64,000 nucleotides of DNA from positions 255,858 through 319,857 of the IMG/VR virus record IMGVR_UViG_3300032245_001746. The stretch is one strand, 5' to 3'. Of this stretch, positions 8,548 to 25,606 are shown piece by piece. Numbering within the stretch: the first letter of the stretch is position 1; each line of letters starts with the position of its first letter. The notes beneath the pieces were generated by a model. That model saw only the letters and a list, made by a program, of their open reading frames with translations. It was not told the DNA's origin and searched no databases. Both the position numbers and the translations under genes were made by a program.

Positions 8548-8652
8548 AGCGATTTTTGGATAAAATTAGTGTTTTACTCGTTACTTATACAGTAGTATAT
8601 ACTAACGTGGTATACCTTTGTATAAGAACATCGCCAAACGCTCTACACTAAT
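8548..8652 (-). ncRNA. Candidate pseudoknotted RNA motif, copy 1 of 3
   Basis: Conserved with 24954-25039 and 25529-25606, with covarying stems. Confidence 0.7.
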
Positions 8653-8696
8653 CCAGCTTTATCAATACCCTAAAGCTGGAAATCGGGATAAATTAG

Positions 8697-8769
8697 TGGT
8701 GCCGGTGGGAATCGAACCCACGACCATCGGATTAAAAGTCCGGTGCTCTACCAACTGAGCTACGACACC
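8697..8769 (-). tRNA. tRNA-Lys(UUU), no encoded CCA
   Basis: GGTGTCG/CGGCACC acceptor, CTTTTAA anticodon loop, GTTCGATTC T-loop. Confidence 0.95.
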
Positions 8770-8795
8770 AATACTGTCAGATTGTACAATCAAAC

Positions 8796-9035
8796 TTACC
8801 AGCCGTAATCGGATGGATCGAAACAAGACATGTCTGGATCTGTATCTAGTTCCAGATCTAAATCCTCATCCAGATATTCATCCAAATAGCTGTCATTACA
8901 GCAACCACATGGACAATACTGATCATATTCCAGATAGGAAAAATACAGATCTTCCAATTCGAGTTCTTCACGAACTTGTTCTTCTCTTTCGAGACGTTGT
9001 TCTTCGTTGAATTTTGCTACCAGGTTTTTTGACAT
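8796..9035 (-). CDS. Very acidic small protein with CPCGCC motif
   Basis: AGGAG RBS; about 25 D/E in 79 aa. Confidence 0.8.
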   Translation of the reverse strand: MSKNLVAKFNEEQRLEREEQVREELELEDLYFSYLEYDQYCPCGCCNDSYLDEYLDEDLDLELDTDPDMSCFDPSDYGW

Positions 9036-9069
9036 TGTTGTTCTCCTGAAGCAGGATTGTACAATCAAA

Positions 9070-9363
9070 CTAAATCATAGCAGCATTTCGAGCCGCACAT
9101 TTTCGTGCATAGTGCAATGATGGAGAATCACGTTTCAGTACAATTAAACCCTTTTTCTGAGTTTCATACATCCAGGTAACGCAGATTGCCTGGTTGACTT
9201 CTCCATTCTGATTTTCAATTTCCACTTCAGTTTCGCCAACAGGAATTTCTTCCTGTTCTTTCATGGTGGGAATGTCGTATCCCATGAAATCATTGGCTAA
9301 CGCATGGAAATAAATCCATGATACTGTGTTTTTTGGAAACGCATCGTAATGAAACAATCGCAT
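9070..9363 (-). CDS. Hypothetical protein
   Basis: TAG stop overlaps the repeat. Confidence 0.8.
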   Translation of the reverse strand: MRLFHYDAFPKNTVSWIYFHALANDFMGYDIPTMKEQEEIPVGETEVEIENQNGEVNQAICVTWMYETQKKGLIVLKRDSPSLHYARKCAARNAAMI

Positions 9364-9376
9364 TTGATTTGATCCT

Positions 9377-9440
9377 ATAGGTGGATATTACAGCAAGGTG
9401 TTTCACCTTTGTGTCTTATTTTGCTGTAATATCCACCTAT
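9377..9440. repeat. Perfect 20-bp inverted repeat in a 5' leader
   Basis: ATAGGTGGATATTACAGCAA / TTGCTGTAATATCCACCTAT, 24-nt loop. Confidence 0.9.
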
Positions 9441-9460
9441 CATCAGATTGTACAATCAAA

Positions 9461-9772
9461 CTAAGTGGTATCCCAATTTTCTTTCCAGAAAAGTGGCCAG
9501 GATTCTTCTGAATACCACGCTTCCCCCCACGATGGAGAGTCGTTTTCGTTGACTTCTTTCACTTTATCAGGATATTTTTCACATGCCTGATCAAATGAAA
9601 TTGATGTTTCATAAACGGCATCGTGCCATTTCATGGTTTGATGATCGATTTTGTTTCCAGGCAGAACCTTAGAACCGTTCGGAAAATAATATCCTCCCGG
9701 CTTGACTTCTGTCATTGCATCAGTCAATTCCTTTTCAGGATAACTACCTTGAGGCACAAGCAGAATTTTCAT
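9461..9772 (-). CDS. Hypothetical protein
   Basis: AAGGA RBS; stop overlaps the repeat. Confidence 0.8.
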   Translation of the reverse strand: MKILLVPQGSYPEKELTDAMTEVKPGGYYFPNGSKVLPGNKIDHQTMKWHDAVYETSISFDQACEKYPDKVKEVNENDSPSWGEAWYSEESWPLFWKENWDTT

Positions 9773-9818
9773 TGTGTATTCCTTGTGAAGTGATAAATCT
9801 CAATTGTACAATCAAACT

Positions 9819-9983
9819 TCATCGATCGGACTGATCTGGACCGTTTCCATATGGACCAACATATTTTGTTGATTCTGGTTTAGAAACGGGATCTGTCAAA
9901 GCTACACCGTTGCCGTATGGACCAACGTAATCAGATTTTTTCTTTTCGTCAACCTGAACGTCGATTTTAATTGTGATTGTCAT
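9819..9983 (-). CDS. Small protein with duplicated YVGPYGNG octapeptide
   Basis: Start trimmed to MTITIK. Confidence 0.7.
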   Translation of the reverse strand: MTITIKIDVQVDEKKKSDYVGPYGNGVALTDPVSKPESTKYVGPYGNGPDQSDR

Positions 9984-10048
9984 GATTGTTCTCTTTGAGA
10001 TTGTGATATCACTACATTGTACAATCAAACTTCATTGATTAAGTACGA

Positions 10049-10084
10049 CAAAAAATGCATGGATTTATTTCCATGCATTTTTTG
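10049..10084 (-). terminator. Intrinsic terminator
   Basis: CAAAAAATGCATGGA/TCCATGCATTTTTTG. Confidence 0.85.
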
Positions 10085-10326
10085 TTTTTCAATATAGGAG
10101 AAGAAATCAGATTTCAGGGGGAGCACGATTATTAATCATGGATGTGTCCAATATTGGATCGGGCTGCGGCGAATATTAGAGATGAAAAGAAAGAAATTTA
10201 TGTTTTAGGTCATGTCCTCATGGTAGTTTCTCCTTGACTAGTGGTTTTTGTTTTAGTTAAGTTTAACTTTTCTAACGTTCGTTGCATCGCAACATTGTAC
10301 AATCAAACTTCATTGATTAAGTACAT

Positions 10327-10359
10327 AAAAAAACAGAGATAAATTAATATCTCTGTTTT
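10327..10359 (-). terminator. Intrinsic terminator
   Basis: AAAACAGAGAT/ATCTCTGTTTT. Confidence 0.85.
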
Positions 10360-10441
10360 ACAACACGACTACGTATGGAACATTTATGTCAGCTTATTTG
10401 CTGGTATTGTTTTTGGGTCCAATCGAGTCGGGTGTTGTATC
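10359..10441 (-). ncRNA. Candidate small structured RNA, copy B
   Basis: Duplicate of 6787-6869 with its own promoter and terminator. Confidence 0.65.
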
Positions 10442-10461
10442 AATGGATTGTACAATCAAAC

Positions 10462-10638
10462 TCACTTCGTGAAGCTCAAAAGTGAAGCTACAAATCCAAC
10501 AAAACACCACAAAATCAACCAAATATGAGCCAATTTGATTGAAATTGGCAGTTTTTCTTTTTCTACCCAATGACCAATTGAGATGAAAATCACGAGAGAA
10601 GTCACCAACATTGCAAAAATAGCTTGGAATGTTGTCAT
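10462..10638 (-). CDS. Small two-TM membrane protein
   Basis: AAGGA RBS, MTTFQ start. Confidence 0.75.
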   Translation of the reverse strand: MTTFQAIFAMLVTSLVIFISIGHWVEKEKLPISIKLAHIWLILWCFVGFVASLLSFTK

Positions 10639-10713
10639 GTTTGTTTCCTTGTTTGATTTTTGATTCACTTCGATATCGGTTCATTGTACAATCAAACTTT
10701 TTATTGTTTTAAC

Positions 10714-10744
10714 AAAAAAAACAGGGATATTTCTATCCCTGTTT
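10714..10744 (-). terminator. Intrinsic terminator
   Basis: AAACAGGGATA/TATCCCTGTTT. Confidence 0.85.
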
Positions 10745-10769
10745 AATCGATTCTCTGAGATTTCTCAGA

Positions 10770-11180
10770 TTATGCAGCTTCTGCCGTTGTCGTCGGTTCC
10801 AGAACAACAGTTTCGACGGTTTCTTCTGCCGTTTCCGTTGTTTCGAGGACAACAGTTTCAGTTTCTTCGTCCGTTGGCAGTTCGACGTTCAGGTGTTCGC
10901 AGATCAGTTCGAGCATATCTGCGTTCTTGTCCGTCTTCGCGTCAACAATCGTGTCGATCAGAGAGGTAACAATTGTTCCCTTGAGGAACTGGAGAAGATA
11001 GTAACAGGCGAGTTCTGCGTCAGAACCCTGTTCCAGTGTCGCCATGAACTTGGCAAATACTTTTGCCATTGTCTTGTCGATTGTGCCGCCCTGTGAGTTC
11101 TTATTCTTAGAACCCTTCGGGCGTCCACGTCCACGCTTAGGAGCTTCGACGTTTACAGTTGTTTCGGCTGAATTTCCCAC
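10770..11180 (-). CDS. AT-hook protein with acidic C-terminal tail
   Basis: PKRGRGRPKGSKNKNS motif; E/T-rich tail. Confidence 0.8.
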   Translation of the reverse strand: MGNSAETTVNVEAPKRGRGRPKGSKNKNSQGGTIDKTMAKVFAKFMATLEQGSDAELACYYLLQFLKGTIVTSLIDTIVDAKTDKNADMLELICEHLNVELPTDEETETVVLETTETAEETVETVVLEPTTTAEAA

Positions 11181-11366
11181 GGCAGTAACCCTTTCAGAAT
11201 TGTTTTTGACTTGTCAACACCGTTGTTGACATCGTCATATTGTACAATCAAACTTCAAAGCCCTTCTCAACTTAGAGAAGGAAGTTTGACCTGACTCTTC
11301 CGAGTCATCTTTGAGTCATCCTTATGAGGAATCATTGTACAATCAAACTTAATTGATTTAAGGAAT

Positions 11367-11397
11367 AAAAAAAGCAGAGATGTATTATCTCTGCTTT
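11367..11397 (-). terminator. Intrinsic terminator after tRNA-Arg
   Basis: AAAGCAGAGAT/ATCTCTGCTTT. Confidence 0.85.
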
Positions 11398-11405
11398 ATA
11401 ATAAA

Positions 11406-11479
11406 TGTCCCCATCAGGGATCGAACCTGAAACCTACTGCTTAGAAGGCAGTTGCTCTATCCAATTGAGCTACGAGGAC
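11406..11479 (-). tRNA. tRNA-Arg(UCU), no CCA
   Basis: ACTGC-CTTCTAA-GCAGT anticodon arm; GTCCTCG/TGGGGAC acceptor. Confidence 0.92.
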
Positions 11480-11483
11480 AAAA

Positions 11484-11623
11484 GAAACAGACCGATTCAG
11501 CATTTCACTATCAATCAGGTGATACGCCCTTACTGGAACTGATATCCAATATTGAATATCAAAAGACGTTTTAAAGTGAAATTTTTTATTAATCCAGTTT
11601 ATCAGAATTGCTCAGTCTGTTTC
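11484..11623 (-). ncRNA. Candidate multi-stem RNA co-transcribed ahead of tRNA-Arg
   Basis: Nested stems plus a 7-bp pseudoknot, no ORF. Confidence 0.55.
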
Positions 11624-11646
11624 TAACTTCAAATTGTACAATCAAA

Positions 11647-11895
11647 CTATGCTGCGAGTCCAATTCGTTGATTCAATGAATTGAAGACACTTTCAACAAG
11701 TTGCTGTCCTGGAATCGGAAGATATTGCAACGTGAGAAGTCCATCGGTTTCAAGATCAAAAACAGACCCTACGTCTTCCATTTTGAATTCATAGGATTTC
11801 TGATTTGTGCATCTGACATAAAGTTCAACTCCTTTTTCAAAGGAAAGAAGTTTTGAACTTGTAGAATCATTTGTCAACAGAACGAAAAAAAACAT
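11647..11895 (-). CDS. Hypothetical protein
   Basis: AAGGA RBS; stop overlaps the repeat. Confidence 0.75.
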   Translation of the reverse strand: MFFFVLLTNDSTSSKLLSFEKGVELYVRCTNQKSYEFKMEDVGSVFDLETDGLLTLQYLPIPGQQLVESVFNSLNQRIGLAA

Positions 11896-11948
11896 GTTTG
11901 TTTCCTTGTGTTGTTTGAACCGACATCAACACATTGTACAATCAAACA

Positions 11949-12296
11949 TCACCAGCCGAATTCGATTTTTGACCGAACTTCATCAGACAATCCAGCTACA
12001 AAAACGGTCAAAGAAAAATCTTTGATCAATTTTCTGTAAACTTTGACACAATCAACAAAAGTTTTACAATCAATGTGAAAATCACGGAAATTGTCATTGT
12101 AGCCAAAAACATAGAATTCTGTTTTTGGTTTTGGTCTGGATTCGACACAGCCGCATTTTTCGCCATCAACACACAATGCGTCCAAAAATCCTTTTTTTGC
12201 ACGCCGATGTGCTTGCCACCATAGTGGACTTTTGTACTTTGGTGAAAAAACATCACCACAACTTTCACAAACAACATTGTACAGTGGAAGGTTCAT
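11949..12296 (-). CDS. Cys-rich putative zinc-binding protein
   Basis: CESC and further Cys; AAGGAG RBS. Confidence 0.75.
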   Translation of the reverse strand: MNLPLYNVVCESCGDVFSPKYKSPLWWQAHRRAKKGFLDALCVDGEKCGCVESRPKPKTEFYVFGYNDNFRDFHIDCKTFVDCVKVYRKLIKDFSLTVFVAGLSDEVRSKIEFGW

Positions 12297-12353
12297 CAGT
12301 GTTCTCCTTGATGACGAATCATTGTACAATCAAACTTTTTTGATTTAATCAAT

Positions 12354-12376
12354 AAAAAAGGAGGGTTTCCCCTCCT
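12354..12376 (-). terminator. Intrinsic terminator
   Basis: AGGAGGG/CCCTCCT with U-tract. Confidence 0.7.
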
Positions 12377-12405
12377 AGTAGTTTTAAATTGTAGAACGCT
12401 GTTTG

Positions 12406-12510
12406 CTAGAGTCCGAATTGATCCAGCAATTCTTCCAGACGACGCAATTCTCGTCGGTTCAAGCGATATCCAACAGACTTCAATCCGATAAGTCGGTCGA
12501 GTTCTTCCAT
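12406..12510 (-). CDS. 34-aa protein MEELDRLIGLKSVGYRLNRRELRRLEELLDQFGL
   Basis: Fills a promoter-terminator unit; below track cutoff. Confidence 0.6.
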   Translation of the reverse strand: MEELDRLIGLKSVGYRLNRRELRRLEELLDQFGL

Positions 12511-12564
12511 TTTTCTTTTTTCCAGAAGGGAGTGAAACAAATTGAACAACGTCACATTGTACAA

Positions 12565-12732
12565 TCAAACTTCTTCAGTTGAAACAACTGTAAATGAGTT
12601 GTCAACATATTGATTGTCTGAATTGTCTGGAATTTCAATGTCTTCAATGAGATCTTCTACAGTCTCACCGTCCTGGACAGTCAATTCGGTTTCAAATTTC
12701 ACCGAATATGTGACACGAATTTTCTTTGGCAT
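12565..12732 (-). CDS. Small acidic protein
   Basis: Start MPKKIR; ends EEV-TGA in the repeat. Confidence 0.75.
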   Translation of the reverse strand: MPKKIRVTYSVKFETELTVQDGETVEDLIEDIEIPDNSDNQYVDNSFTVVSTEEV

Positions 12733-12782
12733 TTTTGTTTTCCTGAGATTCACTAGATCAGAGATATGAGTACATTGTACAA

Positions 12783-13052
12783 TCAAAAACCAGAAAACGC
12801 ATCGTAGTATTTACTGAATGGTTGAGTTGTAGCAATTTCTTCAAGATTTTCGTTGGAAATCCAGCGAGAAAACGTTGAGTCGATATCGGTTGTGAATCTG
12901 ATTAAACTGCGATCTTCATCGCGATAAATCAAAACTCCCACATGATTTAACAAAGTTTCCTGATCTTCCACTTCTTCTTTTTTCATATTGTCATCAAAAT
13001 CAAAAACTGGTGCTTTTTTGATTTTGACATAAACAACATTATTTTTTGGCAT
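12783..13052 (-). CDS. Hypothetical protein
   Basis: Stop inside the repeat. Confidence 0.8.
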   Translation of the reverse strand: MPKNNVVYVKIKKAPVFDFDDNMKKEEVEDQETLLNHVGVLIYRDEDRSLIRFTTDIDSTFSRWISNENLEEIATTQPFSKYYDAFSGF

Positions 13053-13195
13053 GAAAGATCTCCGATAAGTAGAGATAGATATTAAGACACAAAGCCCGCA
13101 TTTTGTTTTGTTATTAGGTACATTACATGTGTCTTAACACTTATCCCTCGATATGAGTACATTGTACAATCAAACTTTATTGATTAAGTATAAAT

Positions 13196-13231
13196 AAAAA
13201 ACGTGAATCGTCTGGTAACGATTCACGTTTT
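13196..13231 (-). terminator. Intrinsic terminator
   Basis: AAAACGTGAATCGT/ACGATTCACGTTTT. Confidence 0.85.
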
Positions 13232-13338
13232 AATTTTAATTTTATTTAAAAATCTGAATACGCTCACATAATTCATTTTTGGTTGATTAGTCCAAAAATT
13301 GCTTTAGGAAGTCCAACCCTACTTAGACTCCTGCTAAA

Positions 13339-13506
13339 TTATGTGAGCCACCTGGGCAGTGATATAGAACACCAACGGTACTTGGCGAATTCCCGTTGGG
13401 TCTTGCTGTATTTTTCAACAGCTTCTTGAGATTCAAAATTAAGAAAGGGTTTTTCTTCAATGAATCCTACAACCACTGCCAGGATGATGAAAACCATCCT
13501 GAACAT
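13339..13506 (-). CDS. 55-aa membrane-anchored protein, paralog of 31157-31327
   Basis: AAGGAG RBS; EKYS..QR.FA..RW....WL motif. Confidence 0.75.
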   Translation of the reverse strand: MFRMVFIILAVVVGFIEEKPFLNFESQEAVEKYSKTQREFAKYRWCSISLPRWLT

Positions 13507-13546
13507 TTCTTTTTCTCCTTGATTGAGATATCAGAGAATTGTACAA

Positions 13547-13768
13547 TCAATCTTCGATAACGCCCGTACTGAATGTGTAAACGTTATCGGCATCTTCGTC
13601 ATTGTAGATCTCAAATTCATTTTCAAGAGATTCAATCTCTTCAGTATTCAACGGACGTTGAAATTGATTTTCAGCCAATTCTTTCAAGCGAATTTTTGCT
13701 TCATCCCAAGATGAAACCGCTGTACAAGCACCCAATGAATTGTTGTGAATTACACAAACAAACAACAT
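13547..13768 (-). CDS. Small acidic protein
   Basis: AAGGAG RBS; stop inside the repeat. Confidence 0.8.
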   Translation of the reverse strand: MLFVCVIHNNSLGACTAVSSWDEAKIRLKELAENQFQRPLNTEEIESLENEFEIYNDEDADNVYTFSTGVIED

Positions 13769-13814
13769 TTCTTTTTCTCCTTGATTGAGATATCAGAGAA
13801 TTGTACAATCAAAC

Positions 13815-14078
13815 TCAGAGTTCTTCCAATCCAAGACAATCAACAAAAGCCTTGACCAAATCACCATGAACACCACAATGAAGAACCTTGCCATCTGGAT
13901 TGGTAAGATCAAATCCGTCACCATCGAGACATGGAAGAATGGAAAGAACGTGATTTTCCTGTCGATCGTAAATCCGAACAACATTGTTCTGAGGAATAAC
14001 CTCAGTTGCGATATCAAATCGCTCATTAGAATCAGCAGCAGATTCCAGACGGTCCTGAACAGAATTGGAATTACACAT
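13815..14078 (-). CDS. Acidic hypothetical protein
   Basis: Start MCNSNS. Confidence 0.75.
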   Translation of the reverse strand: MCNSNSVQDRLESAADSNERFDIATEVIPQNNVVRIYDRQENHVLSILPCLDGDGFDLTNPDGKVLHCGVHGDLVKAFVDCLGLEEL

Positions 14079-14129
14079 TTTTTTGTTCCTTTGAGTTGTG
14101 TGTTGTTCCGATATCGGAAGATTGTACAA

Positions 14130-14399
14130 TCAAACTTCTTCAAGTGGCATTTCTCGTCCATATTGTTTAACATAATTAAACATATGAACATTAAAAATCA
14201 TAGATGGATCAAATGGTGTTTCATTCCATTTTATGATTTTGTAGTTTGATCTAACAGGACGATAAATACCAAGATCAATCCAACGTGATGTATCTCGATT
14301 TTCGATATTTGCTGAAATCCAATTTCCAACCACAACTCCATCCACCGCTACGAAAAAGCAATTTGGATTTATTGTGCTTTCAAGATATTGAATTTTCAT
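14130..14399 (-). CDS. Hypothetical protein
   Basis: Start MKIQYL; ends EEV-TGA in the repeat. Confidence 0.75.
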   Translation of the reverse strand: MKIQYLESTINPNCFFVAVDGVVVGNWISANIENRDTSRWIDLGIYRPVRSNYKIIKWNETPFDPSMIFNVHMFNYVKQYGREMPLEEV

Positions 14400-14634
14400 T
14401 TCGTCTCGGTAATAGAGTTTCTGCCACTGGCATTGAAACAGAATCAATTCCTTCGCCCAATGTTCCAATAGTAAACAATTTGATTCCAGTTGGAGACATT
14501 ACATCCCAATCACGACGATTGTCTGAGTTTTTCAGACAAATCAGCCCGCTGCGTTTTTCAAAACGCCGAATTGAATCTGGTTTTTGTATTGGTTTTTTCC
14601 CGGAAAATTTAGATAGCAAGTAAGTTCGGATCAT
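14380..14634 (-). CDS. Hypothetical protein
   Basis: GGAG RBS, MIRTY start. Confidence 0.75.
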   Translation of the reverse strand: MIRTYLLSKFSGKKPIQKPDSIRRFEKRSGLICLKNSDNRRDWDVMSPTGIKLFTIGTLGEGIDSVSMPVAETLLPRRNENSIS

Positions 14635-14684
14635 TGTCTCTCCAGTGTTGTTCCGATATCGAAGGATTGTACAATCAAACTTTA

Positions 14685-14873
14685 TCAATTGATTTTGAAG
14701 AACGCAATACGATACGTTTCAATCAAAATCAAAGATACAAATCCAGAAAGCACAACCATTGAAAGAGATTTAAAGTTGACTTCTGGATTCATTACCATGT
14801 TGTTAAAGAAAACTACAATCATGCCAATGAAAAAACTCATCAGAATTTGAAGAAATCGCAAAAATCGACTCAT
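14685..14873 (-). CDS. Small two-TM membrane protein
   Basis: Hydrophobic helices. Confidence 0.75.
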   Translation of the reverse strand: MSRFLRFLQILMSFFIGMIVVFFNNMVMNPEVNFKSLSMVVLSGFVSLILIETYRIAFFKIN

Positions 14874-14909
14874 GATTTTTTATGTTCCTGCATTGAAGGA
14901 ATTGTACAA

Positions 14910-15248
14910 TCAAACTTCCCAAGAGCACTCTGTTTCATGAAATTGATTCAGGCATTCTCTTGAACAAAAAGATGGATCATCAGCAAATTCTGATTTAATC
15001 CTACCATCAAGAATATGTTTTCCACAAATATGACAACAAAACATTTCTTTCAAATGATCAAGAATTGCTTGTTCAAGATTAGCAAAATGAGAAATCAGAT
15101 TGCAAGTTTCAATTCCGCCACCAGAAAAGCAACTGGAAGCTATTTCTTCAGCTTGTTTTTCAAGAGTATTGTGTCTTTTTACTTTTGACAAAGTCAATTG
15201 AAATTGTACAAAAGTATCAAGCAAAGCTCTAGCTTGAATATCGTTCAT
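14910..15248 (-). CDS. Protein with C-terminal CxxC...FCSxxC zinc finger
   Basis: CHIC and FCSREC; stop in the repeat. Confidence 0.8.
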   Translation of the reverse strand: MNDIQARALLDTFVQFQLTLSKVKRHNTLEKQAEEIASSCFSGGGIETCNLISHFANLEQAILDHLKEMFCCHICGKHILDGRIKSEFADDPSFCSRECLNQFHETECSWEV

Positions 15249-17015: not shown

Positions 17016-17017
17016 TT

Positions 17018-19115: not shown

Positions 19116-19328
19116 TCAAACAGAAACCGCAGTTTCTGTAGCATGTGCAACATAAATTGTTGAATTTGGATCTTTTGGATCTTTTGGAAACTGGAAACTC
19201 ATGCCAACTTTAGTGGTTTTTGGATAAAAACCAAACTTGGTCTGAAACTTTTCCGGAGAAAGAGCACAAACTGGAATTCCATTTTCCAATACAACGATAG
19301 CAACTTCGCCTGACATCGTAAGAACCAT
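19116..19328 (-). CDS. Hypothetical protein
   Basis: AAGGA RBS. Confidence 0.75.
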   Translation of the reverse strand: MVLTMSGEVAIVVLENGIPVCALSPEKFQTKFGFYPKTTKVGMSFQFPKDPKDPNSTIYVAHATETAVSV

Positions 19329-19534
19329 GACGATTTTCCTTTGATTTTTTTTGGAAGCTAACCGATGTTGATCAATTGTACAATCAAACTAAAAAAGACA
19401 GATTTCCACGTTGCCCTTCGAAAGATAATTATCTTGATTAGTTACCAATCAAAATAATTATCTTTTCTTCTCACAGCTTCCGTTTCTTTTTAAAGTCGGT
19501 CGCATCTCTGCTTCTATCCAACTTCTGTCTTTTT

Positions 19535-20023
19535 TTAGATCATATTTGCACCAAATTCAGGATATTCAGTACCTCTCATTTCTGAAGGACCGCCATCATA
19601 TTTTGTGTGATGTGGATTTTTCAACAAATGAAATGCAAAATTCCACAACCAATTTCGTTGAAGTTTTGACATTCTTTCATGAAAAGAATGGAATCTTGCA
19701 TAAATGATTCTTTGTGCTTTTTCTTTCAATTCAGCACATTGAACCAACTGAATGTCAAAATGCGTTTTGCCAACAAATTTTCTTAACACACAAACAACTT
19801 GTTGGTCAACATATGTTGCTGGTGCAGCAATGGTTGAATAACCATTTGACAGTAAATCCGAATGTGTTTTTTCTGTGAATTCGACAAAAAAGTCGTAATC
19901 ATTTGGGTTTTTACTTCCAAAGTATCTTGACCCAGTCAGATAAAACAAGACGTTCATCTTATCCAATTCAGCTAATTCAGCTTTAATTGGATCGCACTCA
20001 GCAATTGAGCTTCCACGAATCAT
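19535..20023 (-). CDS. Pol-beta-superfamily nucleotidyltransferase
   Basis: YLTGSRYFG....DYDF (GS-x-DxD) motif. Confidence 0.75.
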   Translation of the reverse strand: MIRGSSIAECDPIKAELAELDKMNVLFYLTGSRYFGSKNPNDYDFFVEFTEKTHSDLLSNGYSTIAAPATYVDQQVVCVLRKFVGKTHFDIQLVQCAELKEKAQRIIYARFHSFHERMSKLQRNWLWNFAFHLLKNPHHTKYDGGPSEMRGTEYPEFGANMI

Positions 20024-20078
20024 CTGAAATTTCCTTGTTTTTTCGCTTTGAATCTCTCGACATCAACACATTGTACAA

Positions 20079-20195
20079 TCAAACTCTGTGAAACCAATCT
20101 TTGATTTTCCAATAACCCGAATGTAAACAAACAAACGGAACGAAAATCAAGAAGAAATAAAAAACCCAACCAGCATGTTTCAAACTTTTAATCAT
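20079..20195 (-). CDS. 38-aa membrane peptide
   Basis: MIKSLKHAGWVFYFFLIFVPF...HRV, TGA in the repeat; below cutoff. Confidence 0.55.
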   Translation of the reverse strand: MIKSLKHAGWVFYFFLIFVPFVCLHSGYWKIKDWFHRV

Positions 20196-20202
20196 AAACC
20201 CT

Positions 20203-20778
20203 CTATTCATAGATTGAAAAGATTGCATTATATGCCTTCATTTCATAGGCAAGTGCATCACTTTCCACCAGAGAATCATTTCCTTCGTTGTAGATCAGAA
20301 AAGAAAGTGTATATTTAATGAATTTTGTGTAATTCTGTCTGCTATGACGATATTCATGTGCTAATGTAACAGCAATGATACCATCAGATTCAGAAAAAAC
20401 AGATTTGTTAACATACAACTTTTTGCTGATAAAGTCGTATTTTGCAAAATACCCCTTATCGTCATTGGTAAATACCAATTCCTTGTTTTCAATCTTTTCC
20501 TTAATCCAAATTGCAATTTTTGGATTAACCTCTTCCAAAATTTGGATAGCATTTTGGAGAGATTCCAGTCTTACCGAATCTGGAGTATTGGTGAAAATAC
20601 TGTATTTGTTTGAAACAATGTGTGGATCAATGTTAATCAAACTTTTGAAGTCATCAATTTCTGAGTCTTTTTTGCAATCAAAAAGAATGAAAGCCAAAAG
20701 ACTCAGACAAATTGTTGCCAACACACTTTTCTTGCAAAAAAATTCAAACATGATTGTTCTCTTCATAAGAGTTTTCAC
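20203..20778 (-). CDS. Putative exported HExxH zinc metallopeptidase
   Basis: N-terminal hydrophobic segment; LAHEYRH ... ESDA. Confidence 0.65.
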   Translation of the reverse strand: MKTLMKRTIMFEFFCKKSVLATICLSLLAFILFDCKKDSEIDDFKSLINIDPHIVSNKYSIFTNTPDSVRLESLQNAIQILEEVNPKIAIWIKEKIENKELVFTNDDKGYFAKYDFISKKLYVNKSVFSESDGIIAVTLAHEYRHSRQNYTKFIKYTLSFLIYNEGNDSLVESDALAYEMKAYNAIFSIYE

Positions 20779-20812
20779 CTTGATTCATATGAAGAGATTG
20801 TACAATCAAACT

Positions 20813-21283
20813 TTAGTTTGTCAAAATTGACTGAATTTCAGGTGCAAACAAATTGGCATTAGTTTCTGGCAAAGTCTCAACAATATGTTTGACAAGCATT
20901 GTTTTTGCTTCTGTCAACATAAGAGACAAATATTCTTGTGTAGCCAGAAAAGAAAAATCGTCTGCAAATCTGTTGAGAAATGCCTGTTTCAGAATTAACG
21001 ATGGAAGCTGATCAGCAATAATGTGTGCAATATTAATCACCAAAATAGGTGAAATAAGCGTGAATTTTGATGATCTTGACCAACTCCAAGTAGCAACACG
21101 ACTGTTCATTCTTGGATTTTTAGTATCCAACATTTCAGTGAATTGATCACATTTTTCATCTCTTGAAATGACAATATATTCAGTTTTCAGAGTGTTTTCT
21201 CCATTATCATGTTGTAAACGCTGTGTTGGAAAAAAATACTTTGAAGTAATTGGTTTCAATGTAAGAAACTCTGAAAGCGTCAT
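20813..21283 (-). CDS. Hypothetical protein
   Basis: Start MTLSEF. Confidence 0.75.
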   Translation of the reverse strand: MTLSEFLTLKPITSKYFFPTQRLQHDNGENTLKTEYIVISRDEKCDQFTEMLDTKNPRMNSRVATWSWSRSSKFTLISPILVINIAHIIADQLPSLILKQAFLNRFADDFSFLATQEYLSLMLTEAKTMLVKHIVETLPETNANLFAPEIQSILTN

Positions 21284-21481
21284 GTTTTTATTCCTAAAAG
21301 AGTTAGTAAAGACACATTGTACAATCAAACTGAATCAAATTCTAAGATTTGTTTGACTCAATAATATCCTGCATTTTTTTGTTGTAAATATCAACTAATT
21401 GTTGATATTCTGTGTTGAAACAATGTTGATTAATTGCGGACGGCATGTTGACCAACACAACCGCCAAACAAATAATAACAA

Positions 21482-21760
21482 TTATTCCATAGATGTGTGT
21501 GAACATGGTTGGTGATCCAAATCAATCGCAGTCAAAATTTTATTCAAGTGAATCCCACAAGAATTGACATATGGTAACACAAAAACTGTGCCAGATTCAC
21601 AATTCAATAACTCTTCTTGCAATTGACTATACCAATTCAGAGTTCTGAATTTATGATCTTCTTTAGAAGCTGATTCCAATTCATCCAAAGCTTCCAACAA
21701 ATTCAGTTCTTTTGAAATTGAAAGATTTTCATCTATCAAAATGAAAAAACGCTTTGTCAT
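21482..21760 (-). CDS. Hypothetical protein
   Basis: ORF on coding strand. Confidence 0.7.
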   Translation of the reverse strand: MTKRFFILIDENLSISKELNLLEALDELESASKEDHKFRTLNWYSQLQEELLNCESGTVFVLPYVNSCGIHLNKILTAIDLDHQPCSHTSME

Positions 21761-21877
21761 GTGAAATCATTTCTTGAAAAAAAAGAATAAAAAACAGTGG
21801 TTCGGAATCGTTTTGTTTTTTACCTAATGTCAATATTATTTTAGACTCAGGTGATTCGTTCCACTGTTTTTAGTTTT

Positions 21878-22183
21878 TCAACGAATAGTTCTCTGAAGAA
21901 AAGTCAAATCAAGTTGATTTCTTTCATTCAATCCAACTGCACGAATCAAATCAATTGTTTGAAAACACAACTTGACCGCTTTGAACACTTCCCAAGGATT
22001 CATACAATTATTCAAAATTTCAACCAACGCATCAGTACGTGGAAGAATCATTCCCATACACACAACAGTTTCACCTGTTTCATCAATAACCATTTTGATC
22101 GCATGATTTCCTGGAAGCTTTTCAATTCCAATCATCGTTCCAAAAATGACATTGTTGTCAGAATCAATGTGAATAATCTGCAC
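21878..22183 (-). CDS. Hypothetical protein
   Basis: AAAGG RBS, GTG start. Confidence 0.7.
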   Translation of the reverse strand: MQIIHIDSDNNVIFGTMIGIEKLPGNHAIKMVIDETGETVVCMGMILPRTDALVEILNNCMNPWEVFKAVKLCFQTIDLIRAVGLNERNQLDLTFLQRTIR

Positions 22184-22243
22184 TTGAATTACCTTTTGTT
22201 GAAAGAATTGTTAGTTCGATGTGAAGGAATTGTACAAGCAAAC

Positions 22244-22477
22244 TCAAAACAAGTTTGTGTAAAAATACTTTGCCAAATTTACACCAGCATATCCCAACAC
22301 TGAACAAAGGAACACAATTACAATCGTTGCAATTACGAAAGCAATTCGATCTTGAATCCAATAATTCTTTGGTTTTTCAAGAAAGATTCTTACCTTATCA
22401 GTTAAAGTAAAAAATGAAGCTGCAATTAACATTCCAATTACAGCATAAAAGAAAATTGAAGTAATCGTGGTCAACAT
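22244..22477 (-). CDS. Two-TM membrane protein
   Basis: AGGAG RBS, MLTTIT. Confidence 0.75.
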   Translation of the reverse strand: MLTTITSIFFYAVIGMLIAASFFTLTDKVRIFLEKPKNYWIQDRIAFVIATIVIVFLCSVLGYAGVNLAKYFYTNLF

Positions 22478-22529
22478 GAAAATCTCCTGAGTTTTGTAAA
22501 CTAACATACACTCATTGTACAATCAAACT

Positions 22530-22808
22530 TCAATCCAGTCTAATTGTATTTCCTTTTAAAAATCCACTTGTTACCGCACCAGTAACAATATGTCCACTTG
22601 GTGATTTTGCCTTGAAACCAGTAGAAAATGTATCGCTTTTTGATTTCATCCAAGGACGCCAACCAGTAATTTCAATTTCAGTGTAACCCTGTTCAGATAA
22701 TACTCTTTTTGTATTATCAGGATCAATTGCACCACCATTTGCAATCAAAATAACAAAAAAGAGTATTATCCCACAAAAGATCATTTCAATCAAACTAATT
22801 CTTTTCAT
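22530..22808 (-). CDS. Membrane-anchored hypothetical protein
   Basis: TM helix then L..QGYT.I.ITGW domain. Confidence 0.75.
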   Translation of the reverse strand: MKRISLIEMIFCGIILFFVILIANGGAIDPDNTKRVLSEQGYTEIEITGWRPWMKSKSDTFSTGFKAKSPSGHIVTGAVTSGFLKGNTIRLD

Positions 22809-22841
22809 TTCACTTTTCCTTTTAAAAACAGACAATCAGAG

Positions 22842-23252
22842 TTAAATGAAAGTTTTCCGAATATTTCCCGTTGATACTTTCCAAGTATAACCCGAATCCT
22901 GACTGTTTTGAGTATCTGAAAATAACTCAAGAATTATTTCGCTCTCATCACATGATTTAATTAACTCTGTTTCAGTTAATAAATCACGAATGGAATTCGT
23001 CTTATTCATTTCATCTTCATCATCCCAACCCATATTTTGCAGGGCTTGACCAAAAATACAACCCTTACAATCTGGTCCAGCCAATTTATTACCATCTATT
23101 GCTGGTCCATTCCAGGAACAAAGAACAACATGGTCAGAAGTGTTATAACGAAAATCAGGGTTTTCGTCTGCCAAACGAACAACTTCTTTTCTCAATTTCT
23201 CAAAAAAATCAAGTTGAGTACCATTACTCAGAATCACTTCTGAAATCTTCAT
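22842..23252 (-). CDS. Family A protein (ENPDF.YN..C...GP..CKGCIFGQALQNMGW..Q..QD.G..W)
   Basis: Paralog motif. Confidence 0.9.
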   Translation of the reverse strand: MKISEVILSNGTQLDFFEKLRKEVVRLADENPDFRYNTSDHVVLCSWNGPAIDGNKLAGPDCKGCIFGQALQNMGWDDEDEMNKTNSIRDLLTETELIKSCDESEIILELFSDTQNSQDSGYTWKVSTGNIRKTFI

Positions 23253-23469
23253 GTTGTATCCTTGTTATTAAGAGTTGGAGTGGAATCAATTATTCCACAC
23301 GTTAATGCTATTTATTCTAAAGTGCGACTCAAAAATGAATGAATAACTACATTTCCACTTTTTCGTGTTTCATAGCAATTCAAACATTCAAATAATCCAA
23401 CACTACATGTTCGAATTAACGTACCAGCCCTTCCATTTCCTGCCTTGCAGGTTTCACACTGATTAAATG

Positions 23470-23916
23470 TCATGGATTTTTACTTGTTTCTTGAAGCAAT
23501 TTTGAAATTCTTTCAATTGCTTTACCCCAGGATGCTCCATTATCCTGATCAACTTGTGTATCCCTAAAAGATACAATCCATTTGTGAGTTCGAGGAGTTA
23601 AAATATCAGCATATTCTGTACACAGTATTTCTGATATATTGTGTCCACAATTCATTTCGTTTTCATCATCCCAACCCATATTTTGCAGGGCTTGACCAAA
23701 AATACAACCCTTACAATCTGGTCCAGCTTGAATTGGTGTCACAGATAAAGATGTTTTCAAAGTTGCTGGACCATTGTAATGGCAAGAAGCAAGCCTTTCA
23801 GAAGTATTATACTGAAAATCAGGATTTTCCGTTCCCAATTTAACTACTTCTACTGCCACTTGCTTTACAAACTCAAGTTCAGAATTGAACTTGGCAATAA
23901 TTTCTTTTAAATTCAT
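23470..23916 (-). CDS. Family A protein
   Basis: Paralog motif. Confidence 0.9.
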   Translation of the reverse strand: MNLKEIIAKFNSELEFVKQVAVEVVKLGTENPDFQYNTSERLASCHYNGPATLKTSLSVTPIQAGPDCKGCIFGQALQNMGWDDENEMNCGHNISEILCTEYADILTPRTHKWIVSFRDTQVDQDNGASWGKAIERISKLLQETSKNP

Positions 23917-23971
23917 GATGTTATCCTTGTGGTTGATGTCACTCTATTGTACAATCAAACTTGATTTGATT

Positions 23972-24151
23972 TTACCACCATTCAGGTATTTCTTGATTTT
24001 TTTGATCTTCTTGATTTACATCAGAAATAACAAAAACTGGTGTTAGATTACCGTTTTGTTTCAATTTGATGTACATGCCTTTTACGATATATTTAATTTC
24101 ACCTTGATACAACAAAACTGTATCACCTGTCTGAAGAATAACGTTTGACAT
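23972..24151 (-). CDS. 59-aa hypothetical protein
   Basis: MSNVILQTGDTV...PEWW; below cutoff. Confidence 0.6.
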   Translation of the reverse strand: MSNVILQTGDTVLLYQGEIKYIVKGMYIKLKQNGNLTPVFVISDVNQEDQKNQEIPEWW

Positions 24152-24242
24152 GATTTTTATCTCAAATGGACTATAACAGAATTGAACTGTTTCTAATCAC
24201 TATTATCGTGATCGTGCTCCGTACACTAATAATCCAGAGTTT

Positions 24243-24497
24243 TCAACCAACCAAATGAATTACCAGCGAAATGATACTGGAAATTGCACAAACAATTGTT
24301 GAAATCCAAAGACCAATAGTAACATAAAACTTCTCGAAACCAATCGAATGCAATTTGTGAGAATTCAACTTATTCAAATCCATCTTGGATACATTTCCAA
24401 AAATAGATCGCACAGCAAAAACATGCCATGCCACAGTTGCAACAAACAAAACCACAGCAGAAACAGCAAAAATAACAAACAAATTCATTGCCGTCAT
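24243..24497 (-). CDS. Two-TM membrane protein
   Basis: Hydrophobic helices. Confidence 0.75.
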   Translation of the reverse strand: MTAMNLFVIFAVSAVVLFVATVAWHVFAVRSIFGNVSKMDLNKLNSHKLHSIGFEKFYVTIGLWISTIVCAISSIISLVIHLVG

Positions 24498-24859
24498 TTT
24501 CTCAACTCCAAAAAGAAATTCAAAACATCAATCGTAAAATAAATGGGTTCATTTTTTTGATCAACACCCGTTGTGTGACCATGAATCCATTTTTCAAATT
24601 GATCAACAAGACCAAATCCATCCAAATAATCAAACAGAAATTTCTGTGTATATCCCAACGCAGTGTTGGGAAGAATATGAATTTGTGATTTGATCCGCTC
24701 AATTGCAGTATCAACAACCAAATATTTCAATTCTTCAAGAGAAATGTTGCCATGAACTGGATGGGTATATGGCTTGTTGTCTCGAAAACAAGCCAATGCA
24801 GCCTGAACTTCTTTCAAAGCTGAAAAGGAAATTGAAGACAATTGTTCTTTTTTGCTCAT
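24494..24859 (-). CDS. Hypothetical protein
   Basis: GGAG RBS, MSKKEQ. Confidence 0.75.
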   Translation of the reverse strand: MSKKEQLSSISFSALKEVQAALACFRDNKPYTHPVHGNISLEELKYLVVDTAIERIKSQIHILPNTALGYTQKFLFDYLDGFGLVDQFEKWIHGHTTGVDQKNEPIYFTIDVLNFFLELRK

Positions 24860-24922
24860 CTTATAACTCCAGAAAAGATTGATATTAACACATTGTACAA
24901 TCAAACTTCATTGTATTAAAAC

Positions 24923-24953
24923 AAAAAAAGAACAGGAAAATTTCCTGTTCTTT
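24923..24953 (-). terminator. Intrinsic terminator
   Basis: AAAGAACAGGAAA/TTTCCTGTTCTTT. Confidence 0.85.
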
Positions 24954-25039
24954 AGCGATTTTTTAATAATTAGTGTTTTACTCGTCATTAACTAGAAAGT
25001 TAATTCTAATTAATACACCGCCAAACGCTCCACACTAAT
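24954..25039 (-). ncRNA. Candidate pseudoknotted RNA motif, copy 2
   Basis: See 8548-8652. Confidence 0.7.
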
Positions 25040-25111
25040 GTTCTACTTTATACTATTGTGAGTATTAAATCCTAATCAATAAGTAGAAAAATGATTAGGT
25101 CAAAAATATGA

Positions 25112-25285
25112 TTAACAGAACAGTTGTTCCATTGCTTTGTCAAATTCTTTTTCTGACATAGAACTCAAAACACCAATTTCAGGTGCCTTAGAAACAAACT
25201 TATTCTGATTTGTCTGCAAATTCGTAATGGTAAATCCACCATTCTCAGATCGAATTCTGTATTTTTTACTTTGAACGTTCATCAT
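25112..25285 (-). CDS. 57-aa hypothetical protein
   Basis: MMNVQSKKYRIRSENGG...; follows promoter 25301. Confidence 0.6.
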   Translation of the reverse strand: MMNVQSKKYRIRSENGGFTITNLQTNQNKFVSKAPEIGVLSSMSEKEFDKAMEQLFC

Positions 25286-25320
25286 TTCTCACAATCCTTC
25301 ATTGTACAATCAAACTTCAT

Positions 25321-25445
25321 GAAGTTGAACAATTAACTAATTACCTAATAAAAGTGGCACAATTCTAATTAAATAAGTTGTACTAGGCAGATATTTTGTA
25401 CCTATTAGGTAATCCACCCTGATAATTAGTTAGTTGCTCAAACTC
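25321..25445 (-). ncRNA. Candidate rod-shaped small RNA
   Basis: ORF-free unit between two repeats; long irregular hairpin. Confidence 0.5.
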
Positions 25446-25491
25446 ACAATTCTCGTATTGTACAATCAAACTTCATTAGAAGTAAATAAAT

Positions 25492-25527
25492 AAAACAGGG
25501 AATAAGAATTCATCATTCCTATTCCCC
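25492..25527 (-). terminator. Probable intrinsic terminator
   Basis: GGGAATA/TATTCCC stem, short U-tract. Confidence 0.55.
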
Positions 25528-25528
25528 G

Positions 25529-25606
25529 AGCGATTTTTTAATACTTAACGTTTTACTCGTACGTTTGTAATAAATACAAACACATCGCTAAACGCTCCAC
25601 GTTAAG
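25529..25606 (-). ncRNA. Candidate pseudoknotted RNA motif, copy 3
   Basis: P1 changed to CTTAACGT/ACGTTAAG (compensatory). Confidence 0.7.

What the first reader, a model, noticed from the sequence alone, without database searches (positions are those of the whole stretch)
8548..25606. Three copies of an unrecognised pseudoknotted RNA with compensatory changes, each directly before a terminator
Seen at 8548-8652, 24954-25039 and 25529-25606. Minus-strand consensus: P1 - RGAGCGU - UURGCGRUG - variable hairpin - ACGAGUAAA - P1' - A-rich linker - AUCGCU. P1 is AUUAGUGU/ACACUAAU in two copies and CUUAACGU/ACGUUAAG in the third, a fully compensatory change. The middle hairpin differs in sequence and length but stays paired (CUUAUACA/UGUAUAAG; AUUAAUUAGAA/UUCUAGUUAAU; GUUUGUA/UACAAAC). 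The 3' AUCGCU can pair with loop RGCGRU, and G-U wobbles only work on the minus strand. Copies follow a tRNA, a small ORF and an AT-hook gene. Inference: a mobile 3'-end RNA module such as a self-cleaving ribozyme, nuclease-blocking element or ligand/protein binder. The AGUA/RGAG internal loop resembles a bulged-G motif. It did not match twister, pistol, hammerhead, HDV/theta or SAH consensus by eye.
Basis: partly seen in the sequence, partly recalled or inferred. Interest (0 to 1): 0.83.

Follow-up and report, generated by a model that had tools for sequence, protein, structure and literature searches.

The report
New pseudoknotted RNA at megaphage transcript ends
Three copies of a previously undescribed, strongly conserved folded RNA sit at the very end of three early transcripts of an uncultured freshwater giant phage, each touching a transcription terminator; the RNA is real and matches no known RNA family, but what it does is not yet known.

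Summary
Three minus-strand copies (8652-8548, 25039-24954, 25606-25529) share an invariant core, an 8-bp closing helix P1 with three compensatory pairs, and a variable hairpin P2 that always pairs. Each ends in AUCGCU, and a terminator-like stem starts at the next base.

No Rfam 15 family matches, even at E<=10. Scans of viral, metagenome and genome collections and of cultured phages found the motif only in one phage lineage. That lineage comes from lake metagenomes, shows three haplotypes, and has contigs up to 531 kb.

Between haplotypes the core changed at 1 of 177 positions. Third codon positions changed at 10.9%, and the P2 apex was replaced in every copy with pairing kept. This shows selection on an RNA made from the minus strand. 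The pseudoknot (RGCGRU with AUCGCU) and the 3-bp CGU/ACG helix fit the data but lack covariation.

It is not HDV-like/theta (two copies lack the catalytic C), not ZTP, and not a conventional riboswitch (no terminator overlap, and it lies at the 3' end). "Mobile" is unsupported.

My best guess, at low confidence, is an autonomous 3'-terminal recognition and stability domain that persists as a small RNA. Rivals are a new self-cleaving ribozyme, an exonuclease block and a termination-control element.

The parts
8548..8652 (-). Copy A of the RNA motif. P1 5' strand 8652-8645; AGAG 8644-8641; CGU 8640-8638; pseudoknot 5' strand GGCGAU 8635-8630; P2 hairpin 8626-8584; ACGAGUAAA 8581-8573; P1 3' strand 8572-8565; linker 8564-8554; AUCGCU 8553-8548.
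   Evidence: model R1 scores 82.1 bits; pair counts.
8519..8547 (-). Intrinsic-terminator-like hairpin (13 pairs) plus T run. It starts at the base after AUCGCU of copy A.
   Evidence: A G-C to A-U compensatory change is seen in the relative.
24954..25039 (-). Copy B. P1 25039-25032; pseudoknot 5' strand GGCGGU 25022-25017; P2 hairpin of 11 bp; ACGAGUAAA 24985-24977; P1 3' strand 24976-24969; AUCGCU 24959-24954.
   Evidence: 101.8 bits.
24927..24953 (-). Terminator-like hairpin (12 pairs) plus T run, directly abutting copy B.
25529..25606 (-). Copy C. P1 25606-25599 (CUUAACGU, the compensated version); pseudoknot 5' strand AGCGAU 25589-25584; P2 hairpin of 7 bp; ACGAGUAAA 25560-25552; P1 3' strand 25551-25544; AUCGCU 25534-25529.
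   Evidence: 88.8 bits.
25496..25528 (-). Terminator-like hairpin (14 pairs) plus T run, directly abutting copy C.
   Evidence: Compensatory stem changes are seen in the relative.
8696..8800 (-). Transcription unit that ends in copy A: promoter-like 20-mer 8800-8781, then tRNA-Lys(UUU) 8769-8696, with no ORF. An 8-bp hairpin (CCAGCUUU/AAAGCUGG) fills most of the 43 nt between the tRNA and P1.
25112..25285 (-). 57-aa ORF whose 3' untranslated region (72 nt with two small hairpins) leads into copy B.
25712..26212 (-). 166-aa ORF with an AT-hook-like GRGRPKGSKNK. Its 3' untranslated region (105 nt with hairpins) leads into copy C.
8484..8503 (-). Perfect copy of the promoter-like 20-mer ATGAAGTTTGATTGTACAAT just downstream of terminator A. 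Equivalent perfect copies follow B (24892-24911) and C (25457-25476), so each downstream unit has its own promoter.

Best explanation
The three elements are paralogous copies of a new structured RNA domain. Each is transcribed as the last folded element of an early transcription unit of a freshwater giant phage.

Shown:
- An 8-bp closing helix P1.
- A purine-rich asymmetric internal loop (RGAG opposite AGUAAA).
- A junction carrying a variable but always paired hairpin P2.
- An invariant AUCGCU 9-11 nt after P1, with a terminator stem starting at the next base.
- Purifying selection on the core that is stronger than on codon positions 1 and 2.

Inferred:
- The junction strand RGCGRU pairs with AUCGCU to give an H-type pseudoknot.
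- The A-rich linker runs along P1.
- The pseudoknot helix stacks on the terminator hairpin, making one compact 3'-terminal domain.

Proposed mechanism (inferred, low confidence): the domain is not a switch for neighbouring genes. It is an autonomous recognition and stability module. After termination, and in copy A after tRNA processing, it persists as a stable small RNA or 3' end of about 110-135 nt including the terminator. Its invariant core would be bound by one common partner, a phage or host protein or possibly a small ligand. P2 would be only a structural spacer.

I put the claim that it is a functional structured RNA at about 0.85. I put this particular mechanism at about 0.3-0.35.
For: - P1 and P2 are supported by compensatory changes, by the slide control and by an independent RNAalifold prediction.
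- Wobble pairs work only on the transcribed minus strand.
- The core shows 1 change in 177 aligned positions between haplotypes. Third codon positions of 31 shared ORFs show 10.9% and second positions 4.6%. The binomial P values are 3e-8 and 2e-3.
- The P2 apex was replaced in all three orthologous pairs with pairing kept. A third haplotype shows G-C where another has G.U.
- The two variable positions in the 16-nt 5' block are exactly two of the three sites where a transition keeps the pseudoknot paired.
- The P1+P2 fold plus the pseudoknot duplex (-5.7 to -6.3 kcal/mol) competes with the nested minimum-free-energy fold, with pseudoknot loop penalties left out.
- The terminator stem starts at the base after AUCGCU in all copies.
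- The transcript of copy A contains only a tRNA and the motif, with no mRNA. This argues that the RNA itself, not regulation of an upstream ORF, is the product.
- Each downstream unit has its own perfect promoter copy. This argues against read-through control.
Against: - There are no expression or end-mapping data.
- No partner has been identified. Neighbouring small proteins have no Pfam or PHROG match.
- The pseudoknot and CGU/ACG helix have no two-sided covariation.
- Only three haplotypes of one phage lineage exist, so the number of independent evolutionary events is small.
- Gene conversion among paralogues could contribute to core identity within a genome.
- An ordinary terminator hairpin already stabilises 3' ends, so it is unexplained why only three of the roughly 69 promoter-marked units in the window need more.
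- No antisense targets for the conserved single strands were found in the window. This is neutral for a protein-binding role but removes one easy trans-acting mechanism.
Confidence: 0.33

Rival explanations
1. It is a new class of small self-cleaving ribozyme. It would cut the transcript near the motif and separate the upstream tRNA or mRNA from the terminator domain, for tRNA 3' maturation or for self-limiting early mRNA stability.
For: - It fits the general profile of phage ribozymes: several copies per genome, intergenic, on the sense strand, one copy next to a tRNA, an invariant junction core with a peripheral stem of free length and sequence, and a pseudoknot.
- The order of strands (P1 5', pseudoknot 5', hairpin, P1 3', linker, pseudoknot 3') is the nested double-pseudoknot order of HDV-like ribozymes. 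tRNA-linked theta ribozymes are common in phages (PMC10879173).
Against: - No Rfam ribozyme model matches at E<=10.
- The linker of copies B and C (UAUUAAAAA) has no cytosine, yet HDV-like and theta ribozymes need a catalytic C at the first J4/2 position (PMC10879173).
- Copy A starts 43 nt after the tRNA, not within 5 nt.
- Cutting mRNAs off their terminator has no obvious benefit.
- About 45 invariant nucleotides is more than small ribozymes usually need, although sampling is narrow.
Confidence: 0.2
2. It is an exonuclease-resistant element. A compact pseudoknotted fold would stall processive RNases. Stalling a 5'-to-3' enzyme, as with viral xrRNAs, would leave a stable 3' fragment. Stalling a 3'-to-5' enzyme after the terminator is breached would protect the upstream RNA.
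For: - It sits in 3' untranslated regions, with several copies per genome.
- It has a junction plus a pseudoknot to a 3' tail, with linker plus tail of 15-17 nt.
- xrRNAs are built from junctions and pseudoknots, form a ring of about 15 nt, and also stop bacterial RNase J1 (PMC8374639).
Against: - There is no sequence or covariance-model similarity to any xrRNA family in Rfam.
- An H-type pseudoknot of this geometry need not thread the 5' end through a ring.
- The host is unknown, so whether it has a 5'-to-3' exonuclease is unknown.
- Protecting only the last 100 nt has no evident use unless that fragment is itself functional, in which case this merges with the best explanation.
Confidence: 0.13
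3. It is a cis-acting termination-control RNA in the manner of lambda nutR or HK022 put. Made just before a terminator, it would load a factor onto RNA polymerase or act on it directly, changing termination at the abutting terminator and those beyond. Alternatively it would stack on the terminator stem and strengthen termination.
For: - The invariant order is gene, then RNA element, then terminator, with zero spacing between AUCGCU and the terminator stem in all copies.
- There are several copies, all in the early region and all on the sense strand.
- This is the arrangement of cro-nutR-tR1 in lambda (my own knowledge, not tested here).
Against: - Every downstream unit has its own perfect promoter copy 20-50 nt after the terminator, so read-through is not needed for expression.
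- Only 3 of the roughly 69 promoter-marked units in the window carry the element.
- No boxA/boxB-like or put-like two-hairpin form is visible.
- No segment of the motif can pair with either terminator arm, so no antiterminator alternative exists (read).
Confidence: 0.1
4. It is a metabolite- or ion-sensing riboswitch aptamer.
For: - It has a large invariant core of unpaired nucleotides around a junction and a pseudoknot.
- The overall layout is P1, junction, P2, variable linker, then a downstream strand pairing to the junction. This recalls the ZTP aptamer, whose pseudoknot strand is followed by terminator sequence (bioRxiv 10.1101/521930).
Against: - It lies at the 3' end of units, and a promoter stands between it and the next gene.
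- The terminator does not overlap the aptamer, and there is no alternative pairing.
- No Rfam riboswitch model matches.
- The three neighbouring gene sets share no function.
Confidence: 0.05
5. It is a DNA-level repeat (duplicated segment, protein-binding inverted repeat or single-strand DNA recombination site) with no RNA function.
For: - P1 is an 8-bp inverted repeat flanking the element.
- In copy C the P1 arms read CTTAAC...GTTAAG(T), which resembles integron attC R boxes (my own knowledge).
- Template-switch mutation can keep hairpins complementary without selection.
Against: - Copies A and B lack GTT in P1.
- All mismatches are G.U on the transcribed strand and would be A.C on the other strand.
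- The long invariant non-palindromic core shows 1/177 changes.
- No integrase or transposase lies nearby.
- The copies are at the same places in all haplotypes.
Confidence: 0.04

Closest known systems
HDV-like / theta self-cleaving ribozymes (phage, tRNA-linked)
   Same: The strand order is that of a nested double pseudoknot: closing helix, second helix to a 3' tail, and a hairpin between. The setting is also similar: phage, intergenic, several copies, one copy downstream of a tRNA.
   Different: - There is no catalytic C in the linker of two copies.
- There is no P3/L3 or P1.1 core.
- 10-11 conserved nucleotides lie between the hairpin and the P1 3' strand.
- Copy A lies 43 nt from the tRNA.
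- No covariance-model match.
ZTP (pfl) riboswitch aptamer
   Same: A helix-junction-helix unit whose junction strand pairs with a downstream segment across a variable linker. P1 has a non-Watson-Crick extension, and terminator sequence lies next to the pseudoknot strand.
   Different: - There is no small P3 hairpin.
- The terminator does not overlap the pseudoknot strand.
- The consensus nucleotides do not match, and there is no RF01750 hit.
- It lies at 3' ends rather than in 5' leaders, with no purine or folate genes nearby.
Viral exoribonuclease-resistant RNAs (xrRNA)
   Same: A 3' untranslated region element of a virus, in several copies, built from a junction plus a pseudoknot involving the 3' flank.
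   Different: xrRNAs are known only from eukaryotic RNA viruses. There is no sequence or model similarity here, and the ring topology and nuclease resistance are untested.
Lambda nutR / HK022 put antitermination RNAs
   Same: The RNA element is placed between an early gene and a terminator, in more than one copy per phage (my own knowledge).
   Different: The size and fold are different, and the downstream genes have their own promoters. No factor is known.

Membership tests
Any Rfam 15 family (4227 covariance models) | Score at or above the family gathering threshold. | tested here: not met
   Only tRNAs pass in the window. At E<=10 on short stretches around all three copies, only chance-level hits appear, at 7-22 bits against thresholds of 38-221, mostly on the terminator hairpins.
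HDV-like / theta ribozyme | Catalytic cytosine at the first position of J4/2, the strand before the 3' strand of P2. | tested here: not met
   The linker of copies B and C is UAUUAAAAA, with no C at all. Only copy A has CC. The requirement is taken from PMC10879173.
HDV-like / theta ribozyme | Nested double-pseudoknot strand order. | tested here: inconclusive
   The order P1 5', PK 5', hairpin, P1 3', linker, PK 3' is present. However, the second helix has no covariation, and the junction lengths differ from HDV.
HDV-like / theta ribozyme | Theta subtype: cleavage site within about 5 nt of a tRNA end. | tested here: not met
   Copy A starts 43 nt after tRNA-Lys. Copies B and C follow ORFs.
ZTP riboswitch | P1-J1/2-P2 plus a P3 hairpin with a J1/2:P3 pseudoknot, and a terminator that overlaps P3 and the pseudoknot. 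| tested here: not met
   There is no P3, and the terminator stem begins after AUCGCU and shares no bases with it. There is no RF01750 match. The definition is taken from 10.1101/521930.
Riboswitch (generic) | Aptamer upstream of the regulated gene, with an expression platform that competes with it. | tested here: not met
   The motif lies after the gene or tRNA, and a promoter copy separates it from the next gene. No alternative pairing with the terminator arms is visible in the sequences.
xrRNA | A ring of about 15 nt around the 5' end that stalls 5'-to-3' exonucleases. | not testable with these tools
   Only the ingredients (junction, pseudoknot to the 3' flank, 15-17 nt linker plus tail) can be seen. 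The definition is taken from PMC8374639.
nut/put-type antitermination RNA | Downstream genes depend on read-through of the terminator that follows the element. | tested here: not met
   Perfect promoter 20-mers follow all three terminators, at 8484-8503, 24892-24911 and 25457-25476.
Integron attC-like single-strand DNA site | R''/R' boxes RYYYAAC...GTTRRRY in every site, and little conserved sequence between them. | tested here: not met
   Only copy C has GTTAAGT. Copies A and B have ACACTAAT. The interior is highly conserved. The consensus is from my own knowledge.

The most novel reading that the evidence does not exclude
The motif founds a new functional RNA class specific to giant phages. 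It would be either a new self-cleaving ribozyme fold, or an abundant early RNA decoy whose invariant pseudoknotted core captures a host protein such as a defence nuclease or an RNA-decay factor. The phage carries three tRNA-Lys(UUU) genes, and a sister contig that shares its promoter carries a Pnkp-like enzyme. I read these as hints of an arms race with tRNA-cleaving defences (my own knowledge; not tested here).
Probability: 0.25. Interest if true: 0.85.

Novelty: categorically new. Interest (0 to 1): 0.62.

Why it matters
Giant phages are known almost entirely from metagenomes, and their non-coding RNAs are essentially unexplored. This motif is an RNA fold with no known relative. Its core changed more slowly between haplotypes than the surrounding protein-coding positions did. 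Its position is fixed relative to a terminator.

Whatever it binds or catalyses, it is a compact element of about 80 nt that can be tested at the bench. It could turn out to be a new ribozyme or aptamer fold, or a new way for phages to shape RNA 3' ends or neutralise host factors.

The narrow distribution limits both the evidence and the generality. The motif occurs in one lineage with three haplotypes.

Tried and rejected
- Rfam at gathering threshold and in E-value mode: nothing.
- Megablast and blastn against 50,697 cultured-phage records: only chance fragments.
- Pattern scans of IMG/VR with five designs, from a strict core to a relaxed pseudoknot and 5'-block or 3'-block only. Only the source contig matched. 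All other matches lack P1 and score 21 bits or less with the model.
- Metagenome and genome scans: only close relatives of the same phage. The remaining matches are chance hits.
- Promoter-based retrieval of related phage DNA, followed by a model search: a sister contig with the same promoter has no copy in the roughly 38 kb fetched.
- Homologues of the upstream AT-hook protein: only one 90% cluster and one partial hit. Its members gave more strains but no new motif diversity.
- A search for antisense targets of the conserved single strands in the window: none.
- A sigma-70-like promoter just upstream of the motif: none that would include P1.
- Stop-codon recoding that might place the motif inside an ORF: TAA stops occur in all three frames across each copy. 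The apparent same-frame ORF pair at 33490-34566 is two DUF7666 paralogues.
- An upstream 8-bp hairpin as part of the motif: its spacing to P1 is 0, 2 and 31 nt, and one arm mutates to a mismatch in the relative, so I do not count it as core.
- Host identification by tblastn of two large proteins: uninformative.

Full report
**What is there.** On the minus strand the window holds three copies of one element: A 8652-8548, B 25039-24954 and C 25606-25529. The elements run in this order:
- an 8-nt strand, P1;
- RGAG;
- CGU;
- UU;
- RGCGRU;
- GU;
- a hairpin of 7-11 bp or more with a free loop, P2;
- 1-2 nt;
- ACG, then AGUAAA;
- the complement of P1;
- a 9-11 nt A-rich linker;
- AUCGCU.

The blocks GAGCGTTTRGCGRTG and ACGAGTAAAAC each occur exactly three times in 64 kb, only at these places. 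A terminator-like stem with a T run starts at the base after AUCGCU in all three copies: 8547-8519, 24953-24927 and 25528-25496. Each terminator is followed within about 15-20 nt by a perfect copy of ATGAAGTTTGATTGTACAAT. Its 16-nt core occurs 69 times in the window, always on the minus strand and ahead of an ORF or tRNA. I read it as the phage's early promoter, because it contains TGnTACAAT, an extended -10 look. That reading is an inference.

The units that end in the motif are:
- promoter, tRNA-Lys(UUU), then 43 nt, with no ORF at all;
- a 57-aa ORF;
- a 166-aa ORF with an AT-hook-like GRGRPKGSKNK.

**Is it more than chance?** Yes. On a MAFFT alignment of the window copies and their orthologues (A2), P1 is paired in every sequence and 3 of its 8 pairs change on both sides. 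Nine of the 11 P2 pairs change on both sides. Overall 95-96% of cells are paired, against 32-45% when the partners are slid by 1-3 columns. RNAalifold, given only the alignment, returns P1 and P2. All non-Watson-Crick pairs inside helices are G.U on the minus strand. A covariance model (R1), run over the whole window without filters, scores the three copies at 82-102 bits and nothing else above 19 bits.

**Where it occurs.** The window is part of IMG/VR contig 3300032245_001746, which is 319,857 bp. The same lineage appears in several other records:
- a 530,789-bp scaffold;
- a 68-kb contig from a Canadian lake survey;
- 31-kb and smaller ENA, JGI and NCBI contigs;
- a contig binned into a bacterial MAG.

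These give three haplotypes, and all carry the same copies at the same places. Nothing else has the motif:
- Five pattern designs over IMG/VR found only the source contig.
- One scan each of the metagenome and genome collections found only this lineage.
- blastn against cultured phages gave only chance fragments.
- Model searches of all fetched loci gave no other real match.

**Selection.** The relatives are about 90% identical to the window. Across 31 shared ORFs, codon positions 1, 2 and 3 differ at 6.0%, 4.6% and 10.9%. The motif core, meaning everything except P2, differs at 1 of 177 positions. That gives P=3e-8 against the third-position rate and P=2e-3 against the second-position rate. 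By contrast, P2 differs at 18 of 76 aligned positions and has 27 indel columns. Its apex is replaced in all three pairs while pairing is kept, and a third haplotype shows G-C where another has G.U. The terminator stems also carry compensatory changes. This is the signature of an RNA whose core sequence and helices are both under selection, with P2 as a spacer of free sequence.

**What is not proven.** The pseudoknot RGCGRU:AUCGCU is 6 bp in every copy, at -5.7 to -6.3 kcal/mol. It varies only by A-U to G.U. Both variable positions of the 16-nt 5' block fall on two of the three sites where a transition is pairing-neutral, which has roughly a 0.03 chance. That estimate is post hoc. A 6-bp match with wobbles allowed is not rare between two short segments, so the helix rests on conservation rather than covariation. 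The same applies to CGU:ACG. The purine-rich internal loop could be a loop-E or UAA/GAN-type motif, but that is recalled knowledge and was not tested.

**What it is not.**
- No Rfam 15 family matches.
- It is not HDV-like or theta. The strand order is similar, but the catalytic C that defines J4/2 (PMC10879173) is absent from the linker of copies B and C, and copy A lies 43 nt from the tRNA.
- It is not ZTP. The layout is reminiscent, but there is no P3, no aptamer-terminator overlap and no model match.
- It is not a conventional riboswitch or read-through switch. It sits at 3' ends, no segment can pair with a terminator arm, and each downstream unit has its own promoter.
- It is not coding. 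TAA stops lie in all frames, and the standard genetic code applies.
- It is not shown to be mobile.

**How it most likely works.** The fixed zero-nucleotide junction between AUCGCU and the terminator stem suggests that the pseudoknot helix and the terminator hairpin form one stacked 3'-terminal domain. Copy A's transcript contains only a tRNA and this domain. The domain is therefore probably the product, and not a regulator of an upstream ORF. The three paralogues share an identical core but have unrelated P2 sequences, which points to one common partner that recognises the core. I therefore favour an autonomous 3'-terminal recognition and stability module that persists as a small RNA and is bound by a protein, or less likely by a ligand. 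I put this at about 0.33. The rivals and my estimates are:
- a new self-cleaving ribozyme, 0.2;
- an exonuclease block, 0.13;
- a nut/put-like or terminator-strengthening element, 0.1;
- a riboswitch, 0.05;
- a DNA-level repeat, 0.04.

No computation available here can separate these. The experiments that would are listed under next steps.

**Verdict.** This is a real and strongly constrained structured RNA with no known family, seen in one lineage of freshwater giant phage. The pseudoknot and every functional reading remain hypotheses.

Noticed in passing
window 5516-61813, minus strand (69 sites): There are 69 copies (3 or fewer mismatches) of AGTTTGATTGTACAAT, all on the coding strand. Each follows a terminator and precedes an ORF or tRNA. 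It is probably the phage's early promoter and contains TGnTACAAT. Within IMG/VR the exact 17-mer recurs only in this contig and in a 102-kb contig of the same sample.
   Followed up: partly
window 25318-25456, minus strand: A 139-nt stretch between two promoter copies has no ORF. It folds into a long closing helix with internal hairpins, with z-score -5.2, so it is a possible second non-coding RNA. In the relatives the same slot holds a gene for a small hydrophobic protein, called as 76 aa, instead.
   Followed up: partly
window 8696-8769, 41090-41163, 61710-61783; L049:9558-10508: The 64-kb window has three tRNA-Lys(UUU) genes, plus Arg(UCU), Leu(UAA) twice and Met. A sister contig with the same promoter encodes a polynucleotide kinase/phosphatase-like protein and an ADP-ribosylglycohydrolase. 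This could reflect counter-measures against anticodon nucleases that cut tRNA-Lys. That is my inference only.
   Followed up: no
window 8584-8626, 24986-25015 and 25561-25582 (P2 of the three copies): The apex of the variable hairpin is replaced by substitutions plus 5-16 nt indels in every orthologous pair, although flanking sequence differs by only a few percent. This could be relaxed constraint combined with hairpin slippage, or diversifying selection. I could not decide between them.
   Followed up: partly
window 8653-8695, 25040-25111, 25607-25711, minus strand: Each motif is preceded by one or more extra hairpins of 8-10 bp with unrelated sequence: CCAGCUUU/AAAGCUGG, CCUAAUCA/UGAUUAGG and AAUUGACC/GGUCAAUU. 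Their spacing to P1 is 0, 31 and 2 nt. They are well conserved between haplotypes but are not clearly part of the motif.
   Followed up: partly
window 33490-34566, 35760-36332, 54761-55543: There are at least four paralogous genes with the Pfam domain DUF7666, two of them adjacent and in the same frame, separated by TAA plus one codon. More copies occur in the relatives.
   Followed up: partly
window about 10770-11250, minus strand: A paralogue of the AT-hook gene (RGRGRPKGSKNKN) lies downstream of the tRNA-Arg unit. It ends in an ordinary short 3' region without the RNA motif.
   Followed up: no
L191 (ERZ28594238 KRAE22-1 scaffold_3, 530,789 bp); L196 (Ga0372598_1306711): The same phage lineage exists as a 531-kb scaffold and in a Canadian lake metagenome. 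The window therefore comes from a freshwater phage whose genome may exceed 500 kb.
   Followed up: partly
L071/L080 (CALMMZ010000241.1): A 25.7-kb contig deposited as part of an "uncultured bacterium" MAG carries the three motif copies. These are identical to those of the phage relative, so the contig is most likely a mis-binned phage contig.
   Followed up: no
window 24166-24236, minus strand: A second tRNA-Leu(UAA) is called by ARAGORN only, at 71 nt with the anticodon at position 32. The Rfam tRNA model does not report it at gathering score, so it may be an atypical or degenerate tRNA.
   Followed up: no
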